Shown here piece by piece: positions 22,601-64,000 of a stretch of DNA of 64,000 nt (positions are counted from its first letter, which is position 1; every line of letters starts with the position of its first letter). The stretch lies in NCBI GenBank assembly GCA_964234715.1, contig OZ174283.1; one strand, given 5' to 3'. The stretch comes from Podarcis melisellensis. Its lineage: Eukaryota. The notes under the pieces were generated by a model, which was given only the letters and a program-made list of their open reading frames with translations, did not search any database and was not told the DNA's origin. Made by a program: the position numbers and the translations under genes.

Positions 22601-25600
22601 TGGCCCAATAACTCAATTCATAAAACACACTTTTCGATCAGGTATTTGTTTTATAGCTGTGCAACTGTGAGTTGTTTATCCACAGTGAAAACAAGCAAAG
22701 CTCAAACCCATGTTCTGAAAGCATGCAGTCAAATATTTCATCATACACCTTAGGAACAAAAGCAATATTTCAAAGCTTGTAACTTCTGCTTTTCCTATTA
22801 TCCTTTCCCTCAGCAGGAAATACTGTCTCTTCCTTCATGCTGGTCACTTAATCTCTGCTCTGTAGTTCTCTTAACTCTTATTCACATACATATTTTAAGT
22901 TTTTCAAGTGACTTAGATGTCTAATTTACATGTGGCATTTGCTAGATAGACCCAACAAAATTCTGCAGAATGAATAAATGATAAAACCACATTGCTGCAG
23001 AGAAAGCAAACTTTCAGATGGCTTAACCATTGTCTACCTGAACACCAAGAGCCATGTGCCAGCTTCCAACTCTTCCCTTGTTTCTTCCTTCCTCTTCTTC
23101 TATATACGTTACTCTGCCTACCAATCCCCCACCTATTCCATGTTGCCTTCATTATCACCTTGCTCATGCTGCCCTTCTCACATGATAGAAGTAACGACCA
23201 GTTGGCCTTACGTGCTAAACAGCCTATTTTTCAACACCGCCCTTAAAATACACAGTGGTACCTCGGGTTAAGTACTTAATTCGTTCCAGAGGTCCGTACT
23301 TAACCTGAAACTGTTCGTAACCTGAAGCACAACTTTAGCTAATGGGGCCTACTGCTGCTGCCGCGCCACCAGAGCCCAATTTCTGTTCTCATCCTAAAGC
23401 AAAGTTCTTAACCTGAAGCACTATTTCTGGGTTAGTGGAGTCTGTAACCTGAATTGTATGTAACCTGAGGTACCACTGTATTTTGGAGTTGGTGAACAAT
23501 TGCTTATAATCCCAAACAATTTATAAAAGCAGATATAACACTGCCAAAATGGTTTAGCATCAACTCTCCAACATGCTGATAACAGGCAACTCGTATGCAT
23601 CTTTAGTTGGAAGTAAATACATTTTAGAACAATGAGACTTACTTTCAATTAACTGTGCATAGGATCACAGTTTAAAGTTACTGGAAATTCTGTTTGGTAA
23701 GAGAGAAAGGGAACGACAAACCTCTTGGAGAAGTGGAAAAAACTGATCTTAGTAAAATGTGGAATTAAGGTAGAACTTATCTTCAACTTTGCATATTCTA
23801 TTACTTTATAAAAATACAGCTCAAATGTTCGTTCAATTTAATATTTATTTCTAAGAGAACAGGAAACTTCTAAAGAGTTGCTATGTCACTTTCTTAAATT
23901 ATTTTCATTATTACCTGTTGTTCCAAAGCAAACCTCTTCATCATTTTTTCTTCTGGACTTATTTTGGTATCATATTCCCCAAAACGTTTGTCTTTAAAGA
24001 CATTGGATTTCTCCTTTTCTTTGTATTCTTTCTGCAAAGTCTGAATACGCTGAAAAGCAAAATACCACAATATATTAAGGCAGAAACAAATATTACTCAA
24101 ACAGGGCACCAATAAGCAATAGTCAAACATGTTACAAACAATATGTTATTAATTTACAATCCTACCAATGTTTTTTGGCTTTTTAGCTGCTCACCTGCTG
24201 GTTTTTAGTTCTCACATCCTTTTCCCCCAGCCTGAATTATCCTCTTGACAAAGACACAAAATTAGGTGATGCATAGTTAGGAAACAGGGACACGGGTGGC
24301 ACTGTGGGTTAAACCACAGAGCCTAGGACTTGCCAATCAGAAGGTCGGCGGTTCGAATCCCTGTGACGGGGTGAGCTCCCGTTGCTCAGTCCCTGCTCCT
24401 GCCAACCTAGCAGTTCAAAAGCACGTCAAAGTGCAAGTAGATAAATAGGTACCGCTCCGGCGGGAAGGCAAACAGTGTTTCCATGCACTGCTCTGGTTTG
24501 CCAGAAATGGCTGTCATGCTGGCCACATGACCCGGAAGCTGTACGGCGGCTCCCTTGGCCAGTAAAGCGAGATGAGCACCGCAACCCGAGAGTCGGCCAC
24601 GACTGGACCTAATGGTCAGGGGTCCCTTTACCTTTACCTAGTTAGGAAATATTACACATAAGCTATTCTTACCTTTAGCTCATATGAATTTGCTTTTAGA
24701 CATGCCCCGTCTGCCCGCCAGGTCACTTTCTACCAACTGTCCTCTGAAAAGGATTCCAGGATAGGGAAGGCAGATAAAGACTACTACAAAGCCTGCTTTA
24801 GCTAGGCTTCCCCAAATCCCCCCTCACCTTTCCTTCACCAACTGCCTTATGGCAAAGGTCATGATGTTTTTTTTTTAGCATGCCAATATTATTTATACCG
24901 TTTGCTAAAATTAATTTAATGCCATTTGTAAGCTGCCTTTGAAAGGTTGCAAAACTGTCTGGCCCCATTTCCTAGTAGGCATTTAGCAAGAGCACAATCT
25001 ACACCTGATGCATTCCTAGCCAGCACAGACTCCGGTCTGTGTCTCTTGCCATCTAACTGCATGTGATCTTTTAGGTGAGTGCAGTCTCTGTGGAACTACT
25101 ACCTGGAAGGGAGGGGCCCCTGACCAGTTATGAAAAATGAGGCTGCTGAACACTTTGAGGCTGGGATGTTGTTTAGGAGTTTTGTTGCTGCTAGTGATAT
25201 TACTTTTGTATCTCTTAGATATTATTTTGAAATTGAACAATTTAGCTGTGCACGGTTTAATATTTTATTTATGCTTATGCCTACCTTTGTGATATTTGTA
25301 AGTATATTTTTTCAAGTTGTAAGCCACTTTGAACATGCTGTGAATTGTGGAACGGCAGAAGGCAAAGGTGTGTATCGAAGTACTAACATTATGAAGAGGC
25401 ACAATGTGAAACATACGCTATTTTACAGCATACCTAGTGGGTTCCGAATACAATTCGCTGTGGCCTTACTAGTTGATTTGCTTTATTGGGTTGGCAAGTT
25501 TTATTGTGCTGAGAGGCGCATGCTCAGGACCGCCTCTCCACACCATCTGCCCTTCTCCATAAGCCTCCTCCAGCAGGTCTGGAAGGTGGCAGCACGACAG

Positions 25601-26654
25601 CGGCTCTGTGGTGGCTCCCAGTTTGTGGAAAGCCCTTCCCAGGTAGGATCTTCACCCTTTAGGTGCCTGGCGAAAACATTTCTCTGTAAGCAGGCCTTAG
25701 GCCGATTATAGTGACCTTTTAGAAGTGGGCGGTTTATCTTTCATGTTCTCTTTCTCCCCCCCCCCCCCGGTTTTAACCTATCTCTGTGGGGGGGGGGTTT
25801 GTTTGTCAGTCTCTTCGGGCTGCAACGGCTAAAATAAAGCGACAAACAGATTTAATAATTAAAGGGAAGTTCTCTTTCTGCACATAACTGTGGCATTATG
25901 GGGGAAGTATTGCTTCTTTTCTCTGGCATTCTGGGAAGTCTCGCTTATAATCTTTTCTCTGCTTCTGCACACACTGTACAAACCGGTTCCAAATACCAAG
26001 ACATTCCCTCCTTGCTCAGTTCATCTTAAATTCATGATGCCCTGTTCTCAATGCATAGCTGACCACATCTACGGAACTCGATTATTATATTCTTTCATAT
26101 TATGATCAATCATTAGTAATTGTTTTAGTCATGCTATATCAATCTTTAGTTATAATTTAATTAGGAGGTTTCATGCCTGTCTAGTTCCAGCTCCGTTTCC
26201 CAGCCTTTAATCTATTGGGGATTAATGTCTATACGTAATTCCCGCCTTGTACATATGTTAACCAACCAGCAACAAGTTGCTTTGTGTTTGTATCAACCAA
26301 TCAGCCACAAGCACACCTGTGGCAATGTTTGTAATAATCAATAAATAACGATGATGGTTATTTATTAATTATTCCTACAAATAATAAATAATCATCATCG
26401 TAGTCACGACAAGAGGAGCCCCGTTTCTCCGGCGGCAGCCAAGGGCTCACCTTCCTGTGGGCCTTGGAGCGCGTGACGCCCGGCAGCCCCACGTCGTGCC
26501 TCGTCTTCCTGCCCAGGATGTGGAACTTCTGCCGGTTGACCTTCACCTCGAAGGGGTTGCTCGACACCGAGGGGGCGGCGCCGGAGGGGAGGCCCTGAGC
26601 CCGCCTCGCCGCGGCGCCACCACCGGGCCCCTTCCGCTTGCCCGCTTTGCCCAT
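4585..26654 (-). CDS. NOP14: NOP14 nucleolar protein 14, complete gene span (18 coding exons, 857 aa)
   Basis: 18 GT-AG exons with consistent phases sum to 2574 nt. Recognisable motifs: NPFEVKVNRQKF, DKRFGE, LTHYG, HFGGG, PTSDF.HPV, FIPE, KREFKGAVREIRKD. Confidence 0.97.
5476..5631 (-). CDS. NOP14: NOP14 exon 17 (156 nt)
   Basis: LEFGRKQESNKKEQERKRLIHKHKREFKGAVREIRKDNQFLARMQLAETME. Confidence 0.96.
6064..6418 (-). mobile_element. Sauria SINE
   Basis: GGGACGCGGGTGGCGCTGTGG head, (ACCTTT) tail; 14-bp TSD TAGCATCTAGTGTA. Confidence 0.9.
6943..7058 (-). CDS. NOP14: NOP14 exon 16 (116 nt)
   Basis: ELFDSVLKQLESKGQRCPLVCEKKKPVPLKLFTPKIVK. Confidence 0.94.
7420..8165 (+). mobile_element. Old, degraded CR1-type LINE fragment
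   Basis: Decayed similarity to the CR1 RT C-terminal region (KFADDTKL...KCKV...) with many frame breaks. Confidence 0.55.
8424..8571 (-). CDS. NOP14: NOP14 exon 15 (148 nt)
   Basis: LSCLDLCLDLVKRCAVTYGSLPSFSEIMQPIQMLL...HHLQ. Confidence 0.93.
9707..9863 (-). CDS. NOP14: NOP14 exon 14 (157 nt)
   Basis: YTLVHPFASLGKHSDLLVV...GMNHL; AG/GT flanks. Confidence 0.93.
10065..10218 (-). CDS. NOP14: NOP14 exon 13 (154 nt)
   Basis: CTVTTVQDVVKGLFVCCLFLEYISLSRRFIPELVNFLLGVLYMAMPNKEVQ. Confidence 0.95.
10300..10481. mobile_element. Tigger-like MITE
   Basis: TA|CAGTGGTATCTC ... GAGGTATCACTG|TA. Confidence 0.75.
12374..12475 (-). CDS. NOP14: NOP14 exon 12 (102 nt)
   Basis: LIYLKIIAVLFPTSDFCHPVVTPSLVYMSQLLTK. 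Confidence 0.95.
13274..13409 (-). CDS. NOP14: NOP14 exon 11 (136 nt)
   Basis: PLYDLCQMFPKAASNHVKLVLQDATHDMEEILAVKGHAAFPGLDM. Confidence 0.94.
13680..13771. mobile_element. Small MITE, same family as 839-927 (inverted)
   Basis: CACAGCTGTCAAC ... GTTGACAGCTAT ends and shared internal sequence. Confidence 0.7.
13834..14092. mobile_element. Penelope-like element remnant forming a ~90-bp-arm inverted repeat with hammerhead motifs
   Basis: Arms ~13881-13973 and ~13993-14088 are near-perfect reverse complements; 13-bp TSD TAGGTATTTATAG; CTGAAGA-stem-GAAA motif. Confidence 0.75.
14980..15065 (-). CDS. NOP14: NOP14 exon 10 (86 nt)
   Basis: KLFEFLLEYVGELARQTPPELKTVDKLV. Confidence 0.93.
15192..15322 (-). 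CDS. NOP14: NOP14 exon 9 (131 nt)
   Basis: PESYEQLKAELLGRTTEEQLLVIERIRKSNHPSLAVGNKAKLE. Confidence 0.95.
16281..16563 (-). CDS. NOP14: NOP14 exon 8 (283 nt, acidic region)
   Basis: DGKLNIDDDKDEEE...EVPYLFA; AG/GT flanks, phases fit neighbouring exons. Confidence 0.92.
17183..17351. mobile_element. Tc1/mariner-type MITE (CCGTATTTTT ends)
   Basis: TA|CTGTATTTTTCG ... AAAAAATACGG|TA. Confidence 0.75.
17459..17587 (-). CDS. NOP14: NOP14 exon 7 (129 nt)
   Basis: TDRLRRMCGDEPEKEKKPKHISADDLADGFLLDKDDRRMLSYK. Confidence 0.95.
18635..18757 (-). CDS. NOP14: NOP14 exon 6 (123 nt)
   Basis: PDEYDMIVRELVFEMKAQPSARMKTEEELAKEEQKRLLQLE. Confidence 0.95.
20383..20517 (-). CDS. NOP14: NOP14 exon 5 (135 nt)
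   Basis: RERQTQRENTLELTEKLNSDWKEVQAFLFHKTPKSERQNEEEKPK. Confidence 0.93.
20750..20892 (-). CDS. NOP14: NOP14 exon 4 (143 nt)
   Basis: ELTAAHFGGGG...KSRKELIEEMIAKSKLEK; AG/GT flanks. Confidence 0.95.
21303..21524. mobile_element. Tigger-like MITE
   Basis: TA|CAGTTGTACCTTGG ... CCAAGGAACGACTG|TA. Confidence 0.75.
21712..21853 (-). CDS. NOP14: NOP14 exon 3 (142 nt)
   Basis: KNYEKKNIYNLNEDEDLTHYGHSLADIEK...ERGILS; AG/GT flanks. Confidence 0.95.
22089..22326. mobile_element. Tigger-like MITE
   Basis: TA|CAGTGGTACC ... GAGGTATGACTG|TA. Confidence 0.7.
23253..23478. mobile_element. Tigger-like MITE, same family as 1774-1961 (inverted)
   Basis: CAGTGGTACCTCGGGTT / GAGGTACCACTG|TA and shared internal sequence. 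Confidence 0.85.
23915..24049 (-). CDS. NOP14: NOP14 exon 2 (135 nt)
   Basis: RIQTLQKEYKEKEKSNVFKDKRFGEYDTKISPEEKMMKRFALEQQ; AG/GT flanks. Confidence 0.95.
24287..24638 (+). mobile_element. Sauria SINE
   Basis: tRNA-like head with GGTTCGAATCC B-box, CCTTTACCTTTACC tail; TSD TAGTTAGGAAA. Confidence 0.9.
26451..26654 (-). CDS. NOP14: NOP14 exon 1 CDS (204 nt, ends phase 0)
   Basis: GCCATGG start; MGKAGKRK...NPFEVKVNRQKFHILGRKTRHDVGLPGVTRSKAHRK; donor AAG|GTGAGC. Confidence 0.95.
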
Positions 26655-27130
26655 GGCGCTCCCGCAGTTCACTCCCGTCGACGGAGCTCACGACCCTCGG
26701 AAGCCGGCAGCTCACGTCGCGGGTCGCCCGTGAGCCTCCGCGCGGCAACTCTCGCTCTCTAGTTGTCGCGAGATCTCTCTCTTCCGGCGGAAACGGGCCG
26801 TAGAGTCGAAGCCGCTTACGGAAAGGAAGGGCGCATCCCAGAATGCCTCGCGCAGGGGTCTTTACGGCTTCATTCTCCGCCACTGCGTTTCGGGAGTCCG
26901 CTCGCCCCCTGCTGGCGGACGGAGTTAGGCCTGGCACTGTACCGCCTGCGGAATCCCCCGGCGGCGCTGGGAGGATCGGAACCGGCCTGCAAATGGACCA
27001 ATCGCAGCGGGGCTGTTGAGGGGGGGCCGCCCCGAGGGCGGGGCCAACTGCGTCGGCTGGCGTCACGTGCGTCCGCACCTGGGCTATAAATAAAGGGCCT
27101 GCGCAGCCCTCTCCGCTTAGTCTTGGCCGG
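26655..27130. promoter_or_regulatory. NOP14 CpG-island promoter with bidirectional-looking motifs
   Basis: CpG-rich; TCGCGAGA (~26766), CTTCCGG ETS, CCAAT (26998), GC box (~27036), GTCACGTG E-box (27062), plus-strand TATAAA (27085). Confidence 0.75.
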
Positions 27131-27278
27131 TTTCAATCACCACGAGGGGGTTGGAGCTAGCGACGCGTTTACGCAGAAGGCGAGAAAAGAGCAAAGAGAG
27201 GATTTCCAGCACGGTTTTTTTGCTTCCAATGTCTTTTTTTTTTAAAGCATACTAGTAAAAATACAGACAGTGCATTTG

Positions 27279-27492
27279 TTGGTTTTTTTTAAAAAATAAT
27301 ATTTATTAAAGTTTCAAAAAAGTTAAAGAAGAAAACAGAAAATACAAAATACAGAAAAATAAAAACAATTAAAAACAAGACAATCTTTCCGTGTCATATC
27401 TTTCATTTACTTGTTTCCCTGACCTCCTCACACCTCCCTTTTTTGTATTCTAGTTCAATTAGTTATTTCAGCAAATCCTTTCCATCTTTGCT
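27279..27492 (-). mobile_element. 5'-truncated retroposed 3' end (L1/Tx1-like 3'UTR)
   Basis: 15-bp TSD CAGACAGTGCATTTG (27264-27278, 27493-27507); AATAAA and A-rich tail on the minus strand. Confidence 0.7.
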
Positions 27493-28353
27493 CAGACAGT
27501 GCATTTGCAAGTTGCGAATGAGATGACTGTGACAGCCGCGCAAAACTGTTACTATTGCAGGTTAGCGGGTGGAACTGAAGCCGGTTAGATTTTCTAGCTT
27601 TAAAAAGTCTCCCGTGTAGAGTGAAGCCCTTGTGCTGGCACGTTGCTCTTTCAAATGTTTAAAAGCTTAGAAAATAAAACGAACATTTTCAGGTGAAATA
27701 AGGTTTGAGTTAGAGAGTATTTGTTCCTGCAGCAGGACATTGGAAAGCTCTTCAAAACCCCTTTCAGTTTGCCAAAAAGACTCCGGGACGTTGGATTATT
27801 CGTGAAACCAGCTTACTTTTTAAAACAGTTTCTCTAAAAAAATAAGTCAACATGCTTGCTGAAAAACTGATATTAGCTATACCTTTTTGGAACAATAAAT
27901 GTCAAAACAGAAGTTATTCCTGCATTTCAAGGTACTGCACTAGATCAGTGTTTCCCAACCTTTTTTGGGCAAAGGCACACTTGTTTGATGAAAAAAATAT
28001 CGAGGCACACCACCATTACAGCCCCGTGACGTCAGCACGCAGCGTCACGCCGGGAGGGACGCACGAAAGTGTAACTTTCAATTTTTTCCCCTCCCCCTTG
28101 CCGGGGAACCTCCAAGCTTTAGGGGTGGGGGGGGGAGGAGGCAGCAAAGCGAGGGACTGAGGGACTCCTCCAACGACAAGGGTTGGGGAAGAAGAGAAAG
28201 TTATAGTTGTTTTTTAAAAAGTGATAATTTCATTGTTCTGTTTTTTTGTAAACCGCTTTGAAGGGTTCCTTCTCGGCACGCCCCCCCCCCACCCGACAAT
28301 CAAGCAGCGTATCAATTCCATGAAGCACCAAATGCAGGCGCGTTTTAACTCAC

Positions 28354-28470
28354 GTCTCGGAAGTGGGCGAGGCTGCGCTCGACCAGGGCGCTGAGACACT
28401 CGTAGGCCGAGCCCGCCTGGAGGAAGAGCTGCGCCAGGCACATCGCCTCGCTGCGGAAGAGGGAGCCCAT
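28354..28470 (-). pseudogene. ATP6V0A2: Captured copy of ATP6V0A2 first coding exon (39 codons, intact donor); isolated gene fragment
   Basis: [39 protein letters not shown]|GTGAGT vs recalled human [39 protein letters not shown]. Same 117-nt boundary; Kozak GCCATGG; no other ATP6V0A2 exons seen in the window. Confidence 0.9.
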
Positions 28471-29174
28471 GGCGGAGGGCGCCCAGGCCGGGCCTGAGGA
28501 GGCGCAGCGGCGGGAGCGGCAGAGGCGGCGTCACCGCTCTCCTCGGCGCCGCCTCCGCTCCGCCGTCGCCGCTGCTGCCGTCCCGCTGCGGAGGCGGCTC
28601 CGGGGACTGGCGGGTCCCCCGCTGCCCGGTGCCATGGAGAGGAGGCAGGCGAGGGAGACGGAGACCCGAGTGGCCCCAAGTCCCGCGGCTTCCGGCTTCT
28701 CCTCACAAGTCCAGGCGCCGCCAAGAGAGAAGGGGCGGGGAAAGCCTAGAGCGGCCAACCGCACGCTCACCTCGGAAGCTCCGGTCAATAAGACAGCGCC
28801 ATTGGCCCGGGCGCTCTGCCCCTCGGCACCTCTATGGCTGGCCCGAATACCGAGCGAGAAGCGGTTTCGTCTCTGTGGTAGGGAGGAGCAAAGAAGGGCC
28901 CAGCCAGGCGGGCCGAACGAAAGCGAGCCCAGAGTTCCTGTGCTTCCCTGGTGGGGCCGGCCATTGCCTTTCCCTTGGGCAGGGCGAGGGAATTCCCAGG
29001 CTGCAGCCTCTCGCGCTGGTGCCTCAAAGGCCTTTGCCTTTCCCGTATCACATGTGGAAAAGGGGGCTGGATCCAGTGACGCAACTCGGAAAACTGTTAG
29101 GGAAGCCAGAGCAGGAAAGTGAGTGGGAGGCGGCGTCGCCGCTTTAACCCACGTTTCCTTTTTGAAAGAGAAAC
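28471..29174 (-). promoter_or_regulatory. Captured CpG-island 5'UTR/promoter upstream of the ATP6V0A2-like exon
   Basis: Very GC/CpG-rich; GC box GGGGCGGGG (~28732), ATTGG CCAAT box (28801), CCGGAAG ETS motif, CACATGTG E-box (~29049), TGACG (~29076). Confidence 0.7.
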
Positions 29175-30242
29175 CAGTGTTTCCCAACCTTTTTTGGACT
29201 CGCTCGCAGCACACCAGGCAACAGCTCGCGGCACATTAGTGTGCCGCGGAACACCGGTTGGGAAACACTGCACTAGATGACCCTTGGAGTTCCTTCCAAC
29301 TCCACAATTATATGATTCTGTGGCAAAATACAGTGTTGTTGTTTTTTTGGTGTGTGTGTGTATATATATAATATATATATTCTACATTGTAAATATGGTT
29401 CCCTATCTTTACAGTTTCATTCCTGGTAAATTCCAGTTAGTAAACAAATGTTTATTGTGTTGATGGTCTGTCTCGTCTAACACTTATACTATTTATTAGT
29501 TTATTTTGTTCGAAACCCTGATTCTGATCAATGTTGATTGTGATTAATTTTAATTGTATAAATAGTTCTTTTTTATTATGTTACTTTATGTCCCTCAATT
29601 GCGGGAATTATTTATATGGGGATCCAGAGAGAGAGCCATTTCACTGAGCCCGCGAGAGAGGAGCGCCCTTCGCCGGGCGAGCTGGAAGTGCCTTCGAAGC
29701 AACAGCGCCGCGCTCGCGAGAATGCTGGACAGAGAGCGGGGCGGGGTCTCAGCGCTGCCCAGTTAGAAGTGGGAGGGCCTTCGGTCCCGCTCTCTTTTGC
29801 GATTGGCCCTCGCCGATTTCCTCCCCGCAGACTGGCGACACGCCTCCTTGGAGCTTGAGCAGGAAGTGGGCGCGGCGATCCCACCCCTGCTCCGATTGGT
29901 GGCTCCGGCTGTCCATCCAGGGAGGCGGGGCGGTGGGCTCGCCTGGGGAACCGGAAGCTGTCAGCGCTTGTGCCGGGTTCGCCGAGCGAGGAGGTTCCGC
30001 GCCGCCGCCGGGGATGATGGGAGGCTCTCAAGATGGCGCCGGCGCGTCGGTGGCGGAGTGAGCGCGCCGTCTCCCGCCTCTAGCCCGCTCTGGCGCTGTG
30101 AGCGGCTGGCCGCGACGGCTCTTGCGGGGCCGAGTCCCCCGAGGGCGGGCGAGGGAGTTTGGCCGGCCGGCCGGCCAGCAGCCGGACTCGGAGTTGGCTC
30201 TTCCCTCCGCGCGCGCGCGCCTCTGTGAGGGCGAAGGGGGGC

Positions 30243-64000
<33,758 letters not shown>

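What the first reader, a model, noticed from the sequence alone, without database searches (positions are those of the whole stretch)
23915..28470. Captured ATP6V0A2 exon could act as an in-frame alternative first exon of NOP14
Seen: the captured exon is on the NOP14 strand, 1.7 kb upstream of the NOP14 ATG, has its own promoter and ends in phase 0 (117 nt) at a consensus donor. NOP14 exon 1 also ends in phase 0 (204 nt). Inference: splicing 28354->24049 gives ...AHFRD-RIQTLQKEY..., an 828-aa chimera in which the basic 68-aa NOP14 N-terminus is replaced by the V-ATPase a2 N-terminal peptide. This would be exon shuffling by a DNA transposon at an early stage. Transcription from this promoter would also read through the native NOP14 promoter.
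Basis: inference. Interest (0 to 1): 0.8.

Follow-up and report, generated by a model that had tools for sequence, protein, structure and literature searches.

The report
Transposon-carried ATP6V0A2 first exon upstream of NOP14
A young DNA transposon in a lizard genome has dropped a copy of the promoter and first coding exon of the proton-pump gene ATP6V0A2 just upstream of the ribosome-assembly gene NOP14, in a position and reading frame that would allow a hybrid protein, but no transcript evidence shows that the hybrid is made.

Summary
The sequence observation is correct to the base. A 1325-bp non-autonomous hAT-type element lies at 27946-29270, with 15-bp inverted ends and an 8-bp target duplication. 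On the NOP14 strand it carries a CpG island, a 39-codon V-ATPase a2 first coding exon (28470..28354) and a GTGAGT donor. NOP14 exon 1 (68 codons) and the captured exon both end in phase 0, so the join to exon 2 (24049) is in frame. The insertion is proven by an empty-site alignment with other copies of the old repeat it landed in.

Use of the exon is not shown. No RNA run of the window's own species was found. RNA-like contigs from three studies of a relative about 3% diverged show only the canonical exon 1-exon 2 joint. That relative very probably lacks this insertion, so the test is not decisive. The relative holds about 8 copies of the cargo, so this is one member of a small mobile family.

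The hybrid would lose a NOP14 N-terminus that is nearly identical to the human one, so it is unlikely to replace NOP14. The closest precedents are bat Helitron captures of 5' gene ends and plant Pack-TYPE elements. The 828-aa figure was not checked, because the joined model was not built.

The parts
27946..29270 (-). Non-autonomous hAT-type element (1325 bp) with host cargo ('Pack-hAT')
   Evidence: Perfect 15-bp terminal inverted repeats and 8-bp target duplication. The empty site reconstructed from the flanks aligns without a break to three other copies of an old repeat.
27938..27945 (.). Target-site duplication, left copy (CACTAGAT)
   Evidence: families D7/I1; one search shows a single copy of this motif in paralogous repeats.
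29271..29278 (.). Target-site duplication, right copy (CACTAGAT)
27946..27960 (+). Terminal inverted repeat CAGTGTTTCCCAACC (downstream end in the NOP14 sense)
   Evidence: 3 exact matches in the window against 0.15 expected.
29256..29270 (-). Terminal inverted repeat (upstream end in the NOP14 sense)
29175..29270 (.). Complete 96-bp miniature element formed by an internal third copy of the end (29175-29197, 23/23 identical to 27946-27968) plus the outer end
   Evidence: D2, I3. Very high depth in the relative's DNA (table 2).
27946..28200 (-). High-copy transposon backbone (approximate inner limit)
   Evidence: Depth of 4e4 to 3e5 in DNA run X22 against about 14 for single-copy DNA. Loose ends at 28078, 28165 and 28200.
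28201..29174 (-). Host-derived cargo: CpG island, 5' leader, first coding exon, donor and about 150 nt of intron 1 of ATP6V0A2. Possibly mosaic, with homology breaks at 29022/29042
   Evidence: GC 0.64 and CpG o/e 0.86. X22 contig at depth 113.6 fits 28263-29022 at 99%. A separate piece fits 29042-29174 (table 8).
28471..29022 (-). Putative promoter and 5' leader of the captured gene end (CCAAT 28805-28801, GC box 28740-28732, CCGGAAG 28695-28689)
   Evidence: Read. These are consensus matches only; activity was not tested.
28354..28470 (-). Captured first coding exon of V-ATPase subunit a2 (39 codons, phase 0)
28348..28353 (-). Splice donor GTGAGT of the captured exon
27264..27507 (-). Retroposed high-copy repeat with A-rich tail and the only AATAAA (27307) between the captured donor and the NOP14 promoter. 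Flanked by a 15-bp direct repeat
   Evidence: depth 6e4 in X22.
26451..26763 (-). NOP14 exon 1 (5'UTR of at least 109 nt, then 68 codons from ATG at 26654)
   Evidence: The RNA-like contig X1 record 1 covers 26451-26763.
24050..26450 (-). NOP14 intron 1 (GT..AG), containing a Sauria-type SINE at about 24286-24639
   Evidence: Joint 26451->24049 in X1, X3 and X9 (table 5).
23915..24049 (-). NOP14 exon 2 (45 codons), the proposed acceptor exon
30243..30425 (+). HTT exon 1 ([17 protein letters not shown], four Q), which defines the divergent NOP14-HTT intergenic region that received the insertion

Best explanation
A young, lineage-specific insertion of a non-autonomous hAT transposon sits in the 3.5-kb gap between the divergently transcribed NOP14 and HTT genes of a squamate. 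The element carries a genomic copy of the 5' end of ATP6V0A2: CpG island, leader, 39-codon first exon, donor and the start of intron 1. It is one member of a small mobile family with this cargo.

It points the same way as NOP14, 1.2 kb upstream of the NOP14 start site. Both first exons end in phase 0. If the carried island fires, its cap-proximal donor should therefore pair with the acceptor of NOP14 exon 2, as upstream alternative first exons normally do, and give an in-frame hybrid.

Shown: the insertion, its cargo, the frame arithmetic and the canonical NOP14 splicing. Inferred: promoter activity and hybrid splicing.

The most likely present state is a neutral or slightly harmful passenger, with canonical NOP14 remaining the product. 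Any hybrid would be a minor isoform that lacks the deeply conserved NOP14 N-terminus and is unlikely to do NOP14's job. My odds are about 0.3 that the hybrid junction is detectable in this species, and under 0.05 that it is a selected new isoform.
For: - Insertion and element type: inverted ends, 8-bp duplication and an internal end copy. The empty-site alignment with three paralogous repeat copies agrees.
- Cargo identity: the peptide matches V-ATPase a residues 1-39 and is 16/17 identical to the mouse a2N peptide. The CpG island is preserved.
- Frames and junction.
- NOP14 exons: the Pfam profile is contiguous across 44|45, and the exons match human NOP14.
- RNA-like contigs: those of three studies show only 26451->24049, and the NOP14 contig starts near 26763.
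- Absence in the relative: contigs of the relative (X1 rec 6, X3 rec 23, X22 rec 14) stop fitting exactly at 27945 and run on with unlike letters, so the site is probably empty there.
- Copy number: cargo contig depth is 113.6 against about 14 for single-copy DNA, so about 8 copies.
- Youth: the target duplication and the ends are perfect.
- Intervening sequence: only one AATAAA and no obvious cryptic acceptor lie between the captured donor and the NOP14 promoter.
Against: - No RNA of the window's own species was available, so neither activity nor silence of the carried promoter is shown.
- The absence of the insertion in the relative is inferred from alignment ends. The expected 27945->29279 joint was not among the 15 of 163 joints listed.
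- The copy-number estimate rests on the mean depth of one contig.
- The parent ATP6V0A2 locus was not seen. The direction of capture and the state of the copy relative to its parent are therefore inferred from the transposon boundaries alone.
Confidence: 0.7

Rival explanations
1. The hybrid is really made. The carried CpG island is an active promoter, the captured exon splices to NOP14 exon 2, and a V-ATPase-a2-N-terminus::NOP14 protein is translated as a regular, possibly tissue-specific, isoform.
For: - Phase 0 on both first exons and an intact native donor.
- A strong start context for the captured ATG.
- The CpG island is undecayed (o/e 0.86).
- No cryptic acceptor upstream of NOP14 exon 1, which itself lacks an acceptor.
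- Established knowledge: cap-proximal donors of upstream first exons normally splice to the common second exon.
- Precedent: captured 5' gene ends in bat Helitrons join host transcripts (PMC4224331).
Against: - No such joint was seen among the listed joints, and RNA depth is zero over 28450-28643 in three runs. These are from a relative that probably lacks the insertion, and dips in depth are not evidence.
- The hybrid would delete NOP14 residues that are almost identical between lizard and human and fall in the Nop14 profile.
- The element is multi-copy and transposon-flanked, which invites silencing.
Confidence: 0.3
2. The carried promoter is active but the transcripts are unproductive. They end at the AATAAA at 27307, or run unspliced into the NOP14 promoter. 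The main effect would then be transcriptional interference with NOP14, or a short non-coding RNA with a 41-codon ORF.
For: - The AATAAA plus A-run at 27307 is on the same strand, 1.05 kb past the donor.
- The element lies 1.2 kb upstream of the NOP14 start region defined by the RNA contig.
- Unspliced, the exon runs into a stop after two more codons (41-aa ORF).
Against: A bound U1 at a strong cap-proximal donor usually suppresses nearby polyadenylation sites (established knowledge). NOP14 is an essential gene, so strong interference would be selected against. There are no RNA data for this species.
Confidence: 0.15
3. The exon is the genuine first exon of ATP6V0A2, or an assembly artefact, and not a captured copy.
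For: The peptide is a complete, open a2 N-terminus with promoter-like upstream DNA.
Against: - It lies wholly inside an element with perfect inverted ends and an 8-bp duplication.
- The flanks join into one old repeat.
- NOP14 exon 1 follows 1.7 kb downstream on the same strand and no further V-ATPase exon was seen.
- The cargo is present at about 8 times single-copy depth in a relative.
Confidence: 0.02

Closest known systems
[quoted passage not shown] 2014, PMC4224331)
   Same: A vertebrate DNA transposon carries a promoter, leader, first exon, donor and the start of intron 1 of a host gene. The cargo is amplified to several copies. The captured donor can fuse with host transcripts (the NUBPL fragment joined to SGSM3 in that paper).
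   Different: This is a cut-and-paste hAT-type element with inverted ends and an 8-bp duplication, not a rolling-circle Helitron. Copy number is about 8 rather than thousands. No chimeric transcript has been shown here.
Plant Pack-TYPE elements (Pack-MULE, Pack-CACTA, Pack-hAT; PMC8903248)
   Same: A non-autonomous element with inverted ends whose interior is replaced by host gene fragments. It is mobile and is a potential source of exon shuffling.
   Different: This one is in an animal (squamate) genome. The cargo is a 5' gene end with a CpG island rather than internal coding exons. The capture mechanism is not established here.
Alternative first exons and promoters of ordinary vertebrate genes
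   Same: An upstream first exon with its own CpG-island promoter and donor, a downstream first exon without an acceptor, and a shared second exon in a compatible phase.
   Different: Use of the upstream exon is not demonstrated, and it is a days-old arrival in evolutionary terms. It would remove a conserved part of the protein rather than only a leader.

Membership tests
hAT superfamily, non-autonomous element | 8-bp target-site duplication | tested here: met
   CACTAGAT at 27938-27945 and 29271-29278. There is a single copy in paralogous repeat copies aligned across the empty site.
hAT superfamily, non-autonomous element | Short terminal inverted repeats beginning YARNG | tested here: met
   15/15 complementary ends starting CAGTG. 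The YARNG rule is from general knowledge.
hAT superfamily, non-autonomous element | A related autonomous element with a hAT transposase sharing these ends | not tested
   No such copy is in the window, and no eukaryotic genome collection was available to search.
Pack-TYPE (gene-fragment-carrying) transposon | Interior made of host gene DNA, bounded by transposon ends, with evidence of mobility | tested here: met
   V-ATPase a2 exon 1 with its island sits between high-copy ends. The insertion is proven. The cargo is at about 8 times single-copy depth in a relative.
Pack-TYPE (gene-fragment-carrying) transposon | Identifiable parent locus from which the fragment was copied | not testable with these tools
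   The parent ATP6V0A2 locus is not in the window. A protein-word search with an ORF over the cargo found nothing.
V-ATPase subunit a, isoform 2, first coding exon | End-to-end match to the N-terminus, with the exon ending after ...FRD | tested here: met
   Residues 1-39 align to 1-39 of subunit a chains, E about 1e-6. Pfam gave no hit for so short a piece.
V-ATPase subunit a, isoform 2, first coding exon | Isoform a2 rather than a1, a3 or a4 | tested here: inconclusive
   16/17 identity with the published mouse a2N(1-17) peptide, against 13/17 for a1. No full-length a2 sequence was available to compare residues 18-39.
Expressed chimeric gene / alternative first exon of NOP14 | Frame-compatible donor and acceptor on one strand | tested here: met
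   117 nt and 204 nt, both phase 0.
Expressed chimeric gene / alternative first exon of NOP14 | Transcripts with the captured exon joined to NOP14 exon 2 | tested here: inconclusive
   Only 26451->24049 was seen in three RNA-like runs. The runs are of a relative that probably lacks the insertion, they are contigs rather than reads, and the joint list was truncated.
Expressed chimeric gene / alternative first exon of NOP14 | Active promoter (start sites, open unmethylated chromatin) | not testable with these tools
   Only the island composition and consensus motifs are available.
NOP14 (Nop14-like family, PF04147) | Exons 1 and 2 match the family profile in order | tested here: met
   Profile positions 7-44 and 45-89, E 1.5e-11 and 3.7e-17. 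Human NOP14 7MQ8 residues 9-65 and 66-87 also match.

The most novel reading that the evidence does not exclude
This squamate harbours an active hAT family that repeatedly picks up CpG-island promoters together with the first exon and splice donor of housekeeping genes. It scatters them as ready-made 'portable first exons'. The copy upstream of NOP14 is then a caught-in-the-act case in which the portable exon is transcribed and spliced in frame into an essential gene. That would make it a cut-and-paste counterpart, in a reptile, of what Helitrons did in bats.
Probability: 0.2. Interest if true: 0.75.

Novelty: new variant of a known kind. Interest (0 to 1): 0.42.

Why it matters
Capture of host gene pieces by DNA transposons is well documented in plants, but in vertebrates essentially only for bat Helitrons. 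A cut-and-paste hAT element that moves an intact promoter, first exon and donor would show a second route to new alternative promoters and hybrid proteins in vertebrates, particularly because it has landed in frame before an essential gene. It would catch that route at its earliest stage, which can be tested in populations. If the hybrid is not made, the locus is still a clean natural experiment. It shows what an ectopic CpG island does 1.2 kb upstream of another promoter and next to the HTT promoter.

Tried and rejected
1. A word-based protein search with the 227-aa spurious ORF over the cargo was meant to fish out other copies or the parent locus from public contigs. It found no hit, so parent and sister copies could not be fetched.
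2. A look-up of the scan's notes by cargo sequence was blank.
3. Pfam on the 39-aa peptide gave no family because the piece is too short. The PDB sequence search gave the match instead.
4. An Rfam scan of the whole window found nothing at gathering score.
5. A local BLAST of the element against the window found no second copy of the element. It found only the old flanking repeat.
6. A simple composite model, in which two miniature elements flank the ATP6V0A2 5' end, was considered for the capture. It was not adopted, because contigs of the relative break homology at 29022 and 29042. That suggests a mosaic cargo, and the question is left open.
7. 'Genuine ATP6V0A2 exon 1' and 'assembly artefact' were rejected on the transposon boundaries and the empty-site alignment.
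8. The joined chimera and the joined NOP14 model were not built, translated or searched. The 828-aa figure is therefore unverified.
9. The large representative-protein search was not used, because the claim does not rest on absence of relatives.

Full report
**What is in the sequence**

Read on the minus strand, the region holds the following, from upstream to downstream.

- An 8-bp motif CACTAGAT lies at 29278-29271.
- A transposon end CAGTGTTTCCCAACC lies at 29270-29256.
- A 96-bp miniature element is closed by a third copy of the same end (29197-29175).
- About 0.97 kb of GC-rich DNA follows.
- About 255 bp of high-copy transposon backbone follows that.
- The other end lies at 27960-27946.
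- A second CACTAGAT lies at 27945-27938.

The end motif occurs three times in the window against 0.15 expected by chance. I joined the two flanks with one copy of the 8-bp motif. That joined sequence aligns without interruption to three other copies of an old interspersed repeat elsewhere in the window, at about 42400-42600, 48080-48260 and 36150-36340. The 1325 bp are therefore a true insertion with an 8-bp target duplication. Together with ends starting CAGTG, this is the signature of a hAT-type element. The duplication and the ends are perfect, so the insertion is young.

**The cargo**

The interior from 28201 to 29174 has GC 0.64 and CpG o/e 0.86. It contains an ATG in a GCCGCCATGG context at 28470, then 39 codons, then GAC|GTGAGT.

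- The peptide aligns over its whole length with residues 1-39 of V-ATPase subunit a chains in the PDB (E about 1e-6).
- Its first 17 residues are 16/17 identical to the mouse a2N(1-17) peptide printed in PMC8204395. For a1 the figure is 13/17.
- The a2 assignment is therefore well founded for the first half. For residues 18-39 it rests partly on my memory of a2 sequences.
- Residues 30-37 differ from the subunit a chains aligned. Without the parent locus I cannot say whether this is decay of the copy.
- CCAAT, GC-box and CCGGAAG matches lie at 28805-28689. They are consensus matches only.

**NOP14 and its neighbour**

- The NOP14 exon 1 coding part (26654..26451, 68 codons) matches Pfam Nop14 profile positions 7-44. 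Exon 2 (24049..23915, 45 codons) matches positions 45-89, so the match is contiguous across the exon border.
- Exon 1 residues 33-64 are almost letter for letter those of human NOP14 in the small-subunit processome structure 7MQ8.
- HTT exon 1, with four glutamines, starts at 30243 on the plus strand. The element therefore sits in the divergent NOP14-HTT intergenic region.

The captured exon is 117 nt and the NOP14 exon 1 coding part is 204 nt. Both end in phase 0, and the junction would read ...AHFRD-RIQTLQKEY.... All of this is correct. I did not build, translate or search the joined model, so the 828-aa total stays unverified.

**Transcript evidence**

The run search found no RNA run on record for the stretch.

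- The best DNA holders (share 0.79) belong to organism E, which is probably the source of the window.
- Twelve small runs, guessed to be RNA, belong to organism A.
- DNA contigs of organism A differ from the window by about 3% in single-copy DNA.

I laid three RNA-like runs from three studies and one DNA run of organism A on 23600-29400. Three results matter.

1. *Only canonical splicing was seen.* X1, X3 and X9 each hold a spliced contig with the joint 26451->24049 (GT..AG on the minus strand). This confirms that they are RNA and that the exon 2 acceptor is used. The 2978-nt contig of X1 reaches up to 26763 and no further. No joint from 28354 was among the 15 joints listed, and 148 joints were not shown.

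2. *The relative probably lacks the insertion.* Three contigs of organism A stop fitting the window exactly at 27945, the last base before the transposon end. They are X1 record 6, X3 record 23 and X22 record 14, and they continue for 86, 7 and 23 letters that do not fit. If the element were present, the next 23 letters would be the high-copy end and would have aligned. Organism A therefore very probably has an empty site. The RNA test is thus not a test of this allele. The tool also warns that contigs show presence and not absence, and that dips in depth over conserved exons are no finding.

3. *The cargo is multi-copy in the relative.* A DNA contig of organism A fits 28263-29022 at 99% with depth 113.6, where single-copy contigs have about 14. 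The cargo therefore exists in roughly eight copies in the relative. Homology breaks at 29022 and 29042, and 29042-29174 occurs as a separate piece in RNA-like contigs. The cargo may therefore be a mosaic. The ATP6V0A2-bearing element is a small mobile family, and the NOP14 copy is a recent jump.

**How it would work if the island fires**

NOP14 exon 1 has no acceptor. A crude scan finds no pyrimidine-rich acceptor between 28353 and the NOP14 promoter. The only AATAAA on the way, at 27307, lies in the tail of a retroposed repeat flanked by a 15-bp duplication. By the usual behaviour of upstream alternative first exons, the cap-proximal donor is favoured and the downstream first exon is skipped. 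This is established knowledge and was not tested here. The captured donor would then pair with the exon 2 acceptor.

The product would swap the NOP14 N-terminus, conserved from lizard to human, for the a2 helix. In mouse that helix is described as regulating cytohesin-2 (PMC8204395). Such a protein is unlikely to substitute for NOP14. The alternatives are premature 3' ends near 27290, read-through interference with the NOP14 promoter, or silence of the island.

**Comparison with what is known**

- Plant Pack-TYPE elements, which include hAT-type ones, carry host fragments (PMC8903248).
- In vertebrates, the documented parallel is the bat Helitrons. They preferentially capture promoters, leaders, first exons and partial first introns. 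The NUBPL capture, for example, contributes splice sites to host transcripts (PMC4224331).
- The present case has the same cargo anatomy in a cut-and-paste element of a reptile.
- First readers of this scan left 17 unchecked notes of similar 'Pack-hAT' elements with other gene 5' ends in this genome. I did not test those.

**Verdict**

- The capture and insertion are real.
- The in-frame potential is real.
- Use as a first exon is unproven and could not be tested on the right species.

I rate the chance of a detectable hybrid junction at about 0.3, and the chance of a selected new isoform below 0.05.

Noticed in passing
window 30243-30425 (+): HTT exon 1 with a glutamine run of only four, inside a CpG island (29600-30600). 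NOP14 and HTT are head to head about 3.5 kb apart, with no gene seen between them apart from the transposon.
   Followed up: partly
window 28263-29022: In the DNA run of the related species, one contig covering the cargo has depth 113.6 against about 14 for single-copy contigs, and is 99% identical to the window. The ATP6V0A2-bearing element therefore seems to exist in about 8 copies there.
   Followed up: partly
window 29022-29042 and 29042-29174: Contigs of the relative break homology at 29022 and at 29042. The 133-bp piece 29042-29174 occurs on its own in RNA-like contigs (depth 47 and 30) that continue differently. The cargo may be a mosaic of two sources. A 16-nt imperfect direct repeat (28959-28974 and 29029-29044) sits at the break.
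   Followed up: no
window 27712-27945: Low-depth RNA-like contigs (depth 6-7) of the relative cover the DNA just beside the insertion site, upstream of the NOP14 start region. This may be upstream antisense transcription from the HTT island, or contaminating DNA.
   Followed up: no
window 26573 (NOP14 exon 1): One RNA-like contig of the relative (X1) has 9 extra letters (GGCGGCAGC) behind 26573. This is an in-frame three-codon difference in the Gly/Ala-rich start of NOP14. It is not seen in X3, X9 or X22.
   Followed up: no
window 24286-24639: A Sauria-type SINE in NOP14 intron 1, with depth in the millions in the DNA run. It marks the genome as squamate.
   Followed up: no
window 27264-27507: A retroposed high-copy repeat with an AATAAA and an A-rich tail, flanked by a perfect 15-bp direct repeat (CAAATGCACTGTCTG). 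It is on the NOP14 strand between the transposon and the NOP14 promoter.
   Followed up: partly
window 36150-36340, 42400-42600, 48080-48260, and the flanks 27880-27945 / 29279-29330: Four copies of an old interspersed repeat (about 80% alike). The hAT element inserted into one of them.
   Followed up: partly
same genome, other windows (scan notes): Seventeen first-reader notes describe hAT elements carrying CpG islands and first exons of other genes (UBE2G1, CDAN1, DCLK2, AHSA1 and others). If they are real and share these ends, capture of 5' gene ends is a genome-wide habit of this family.
   Followed up: no
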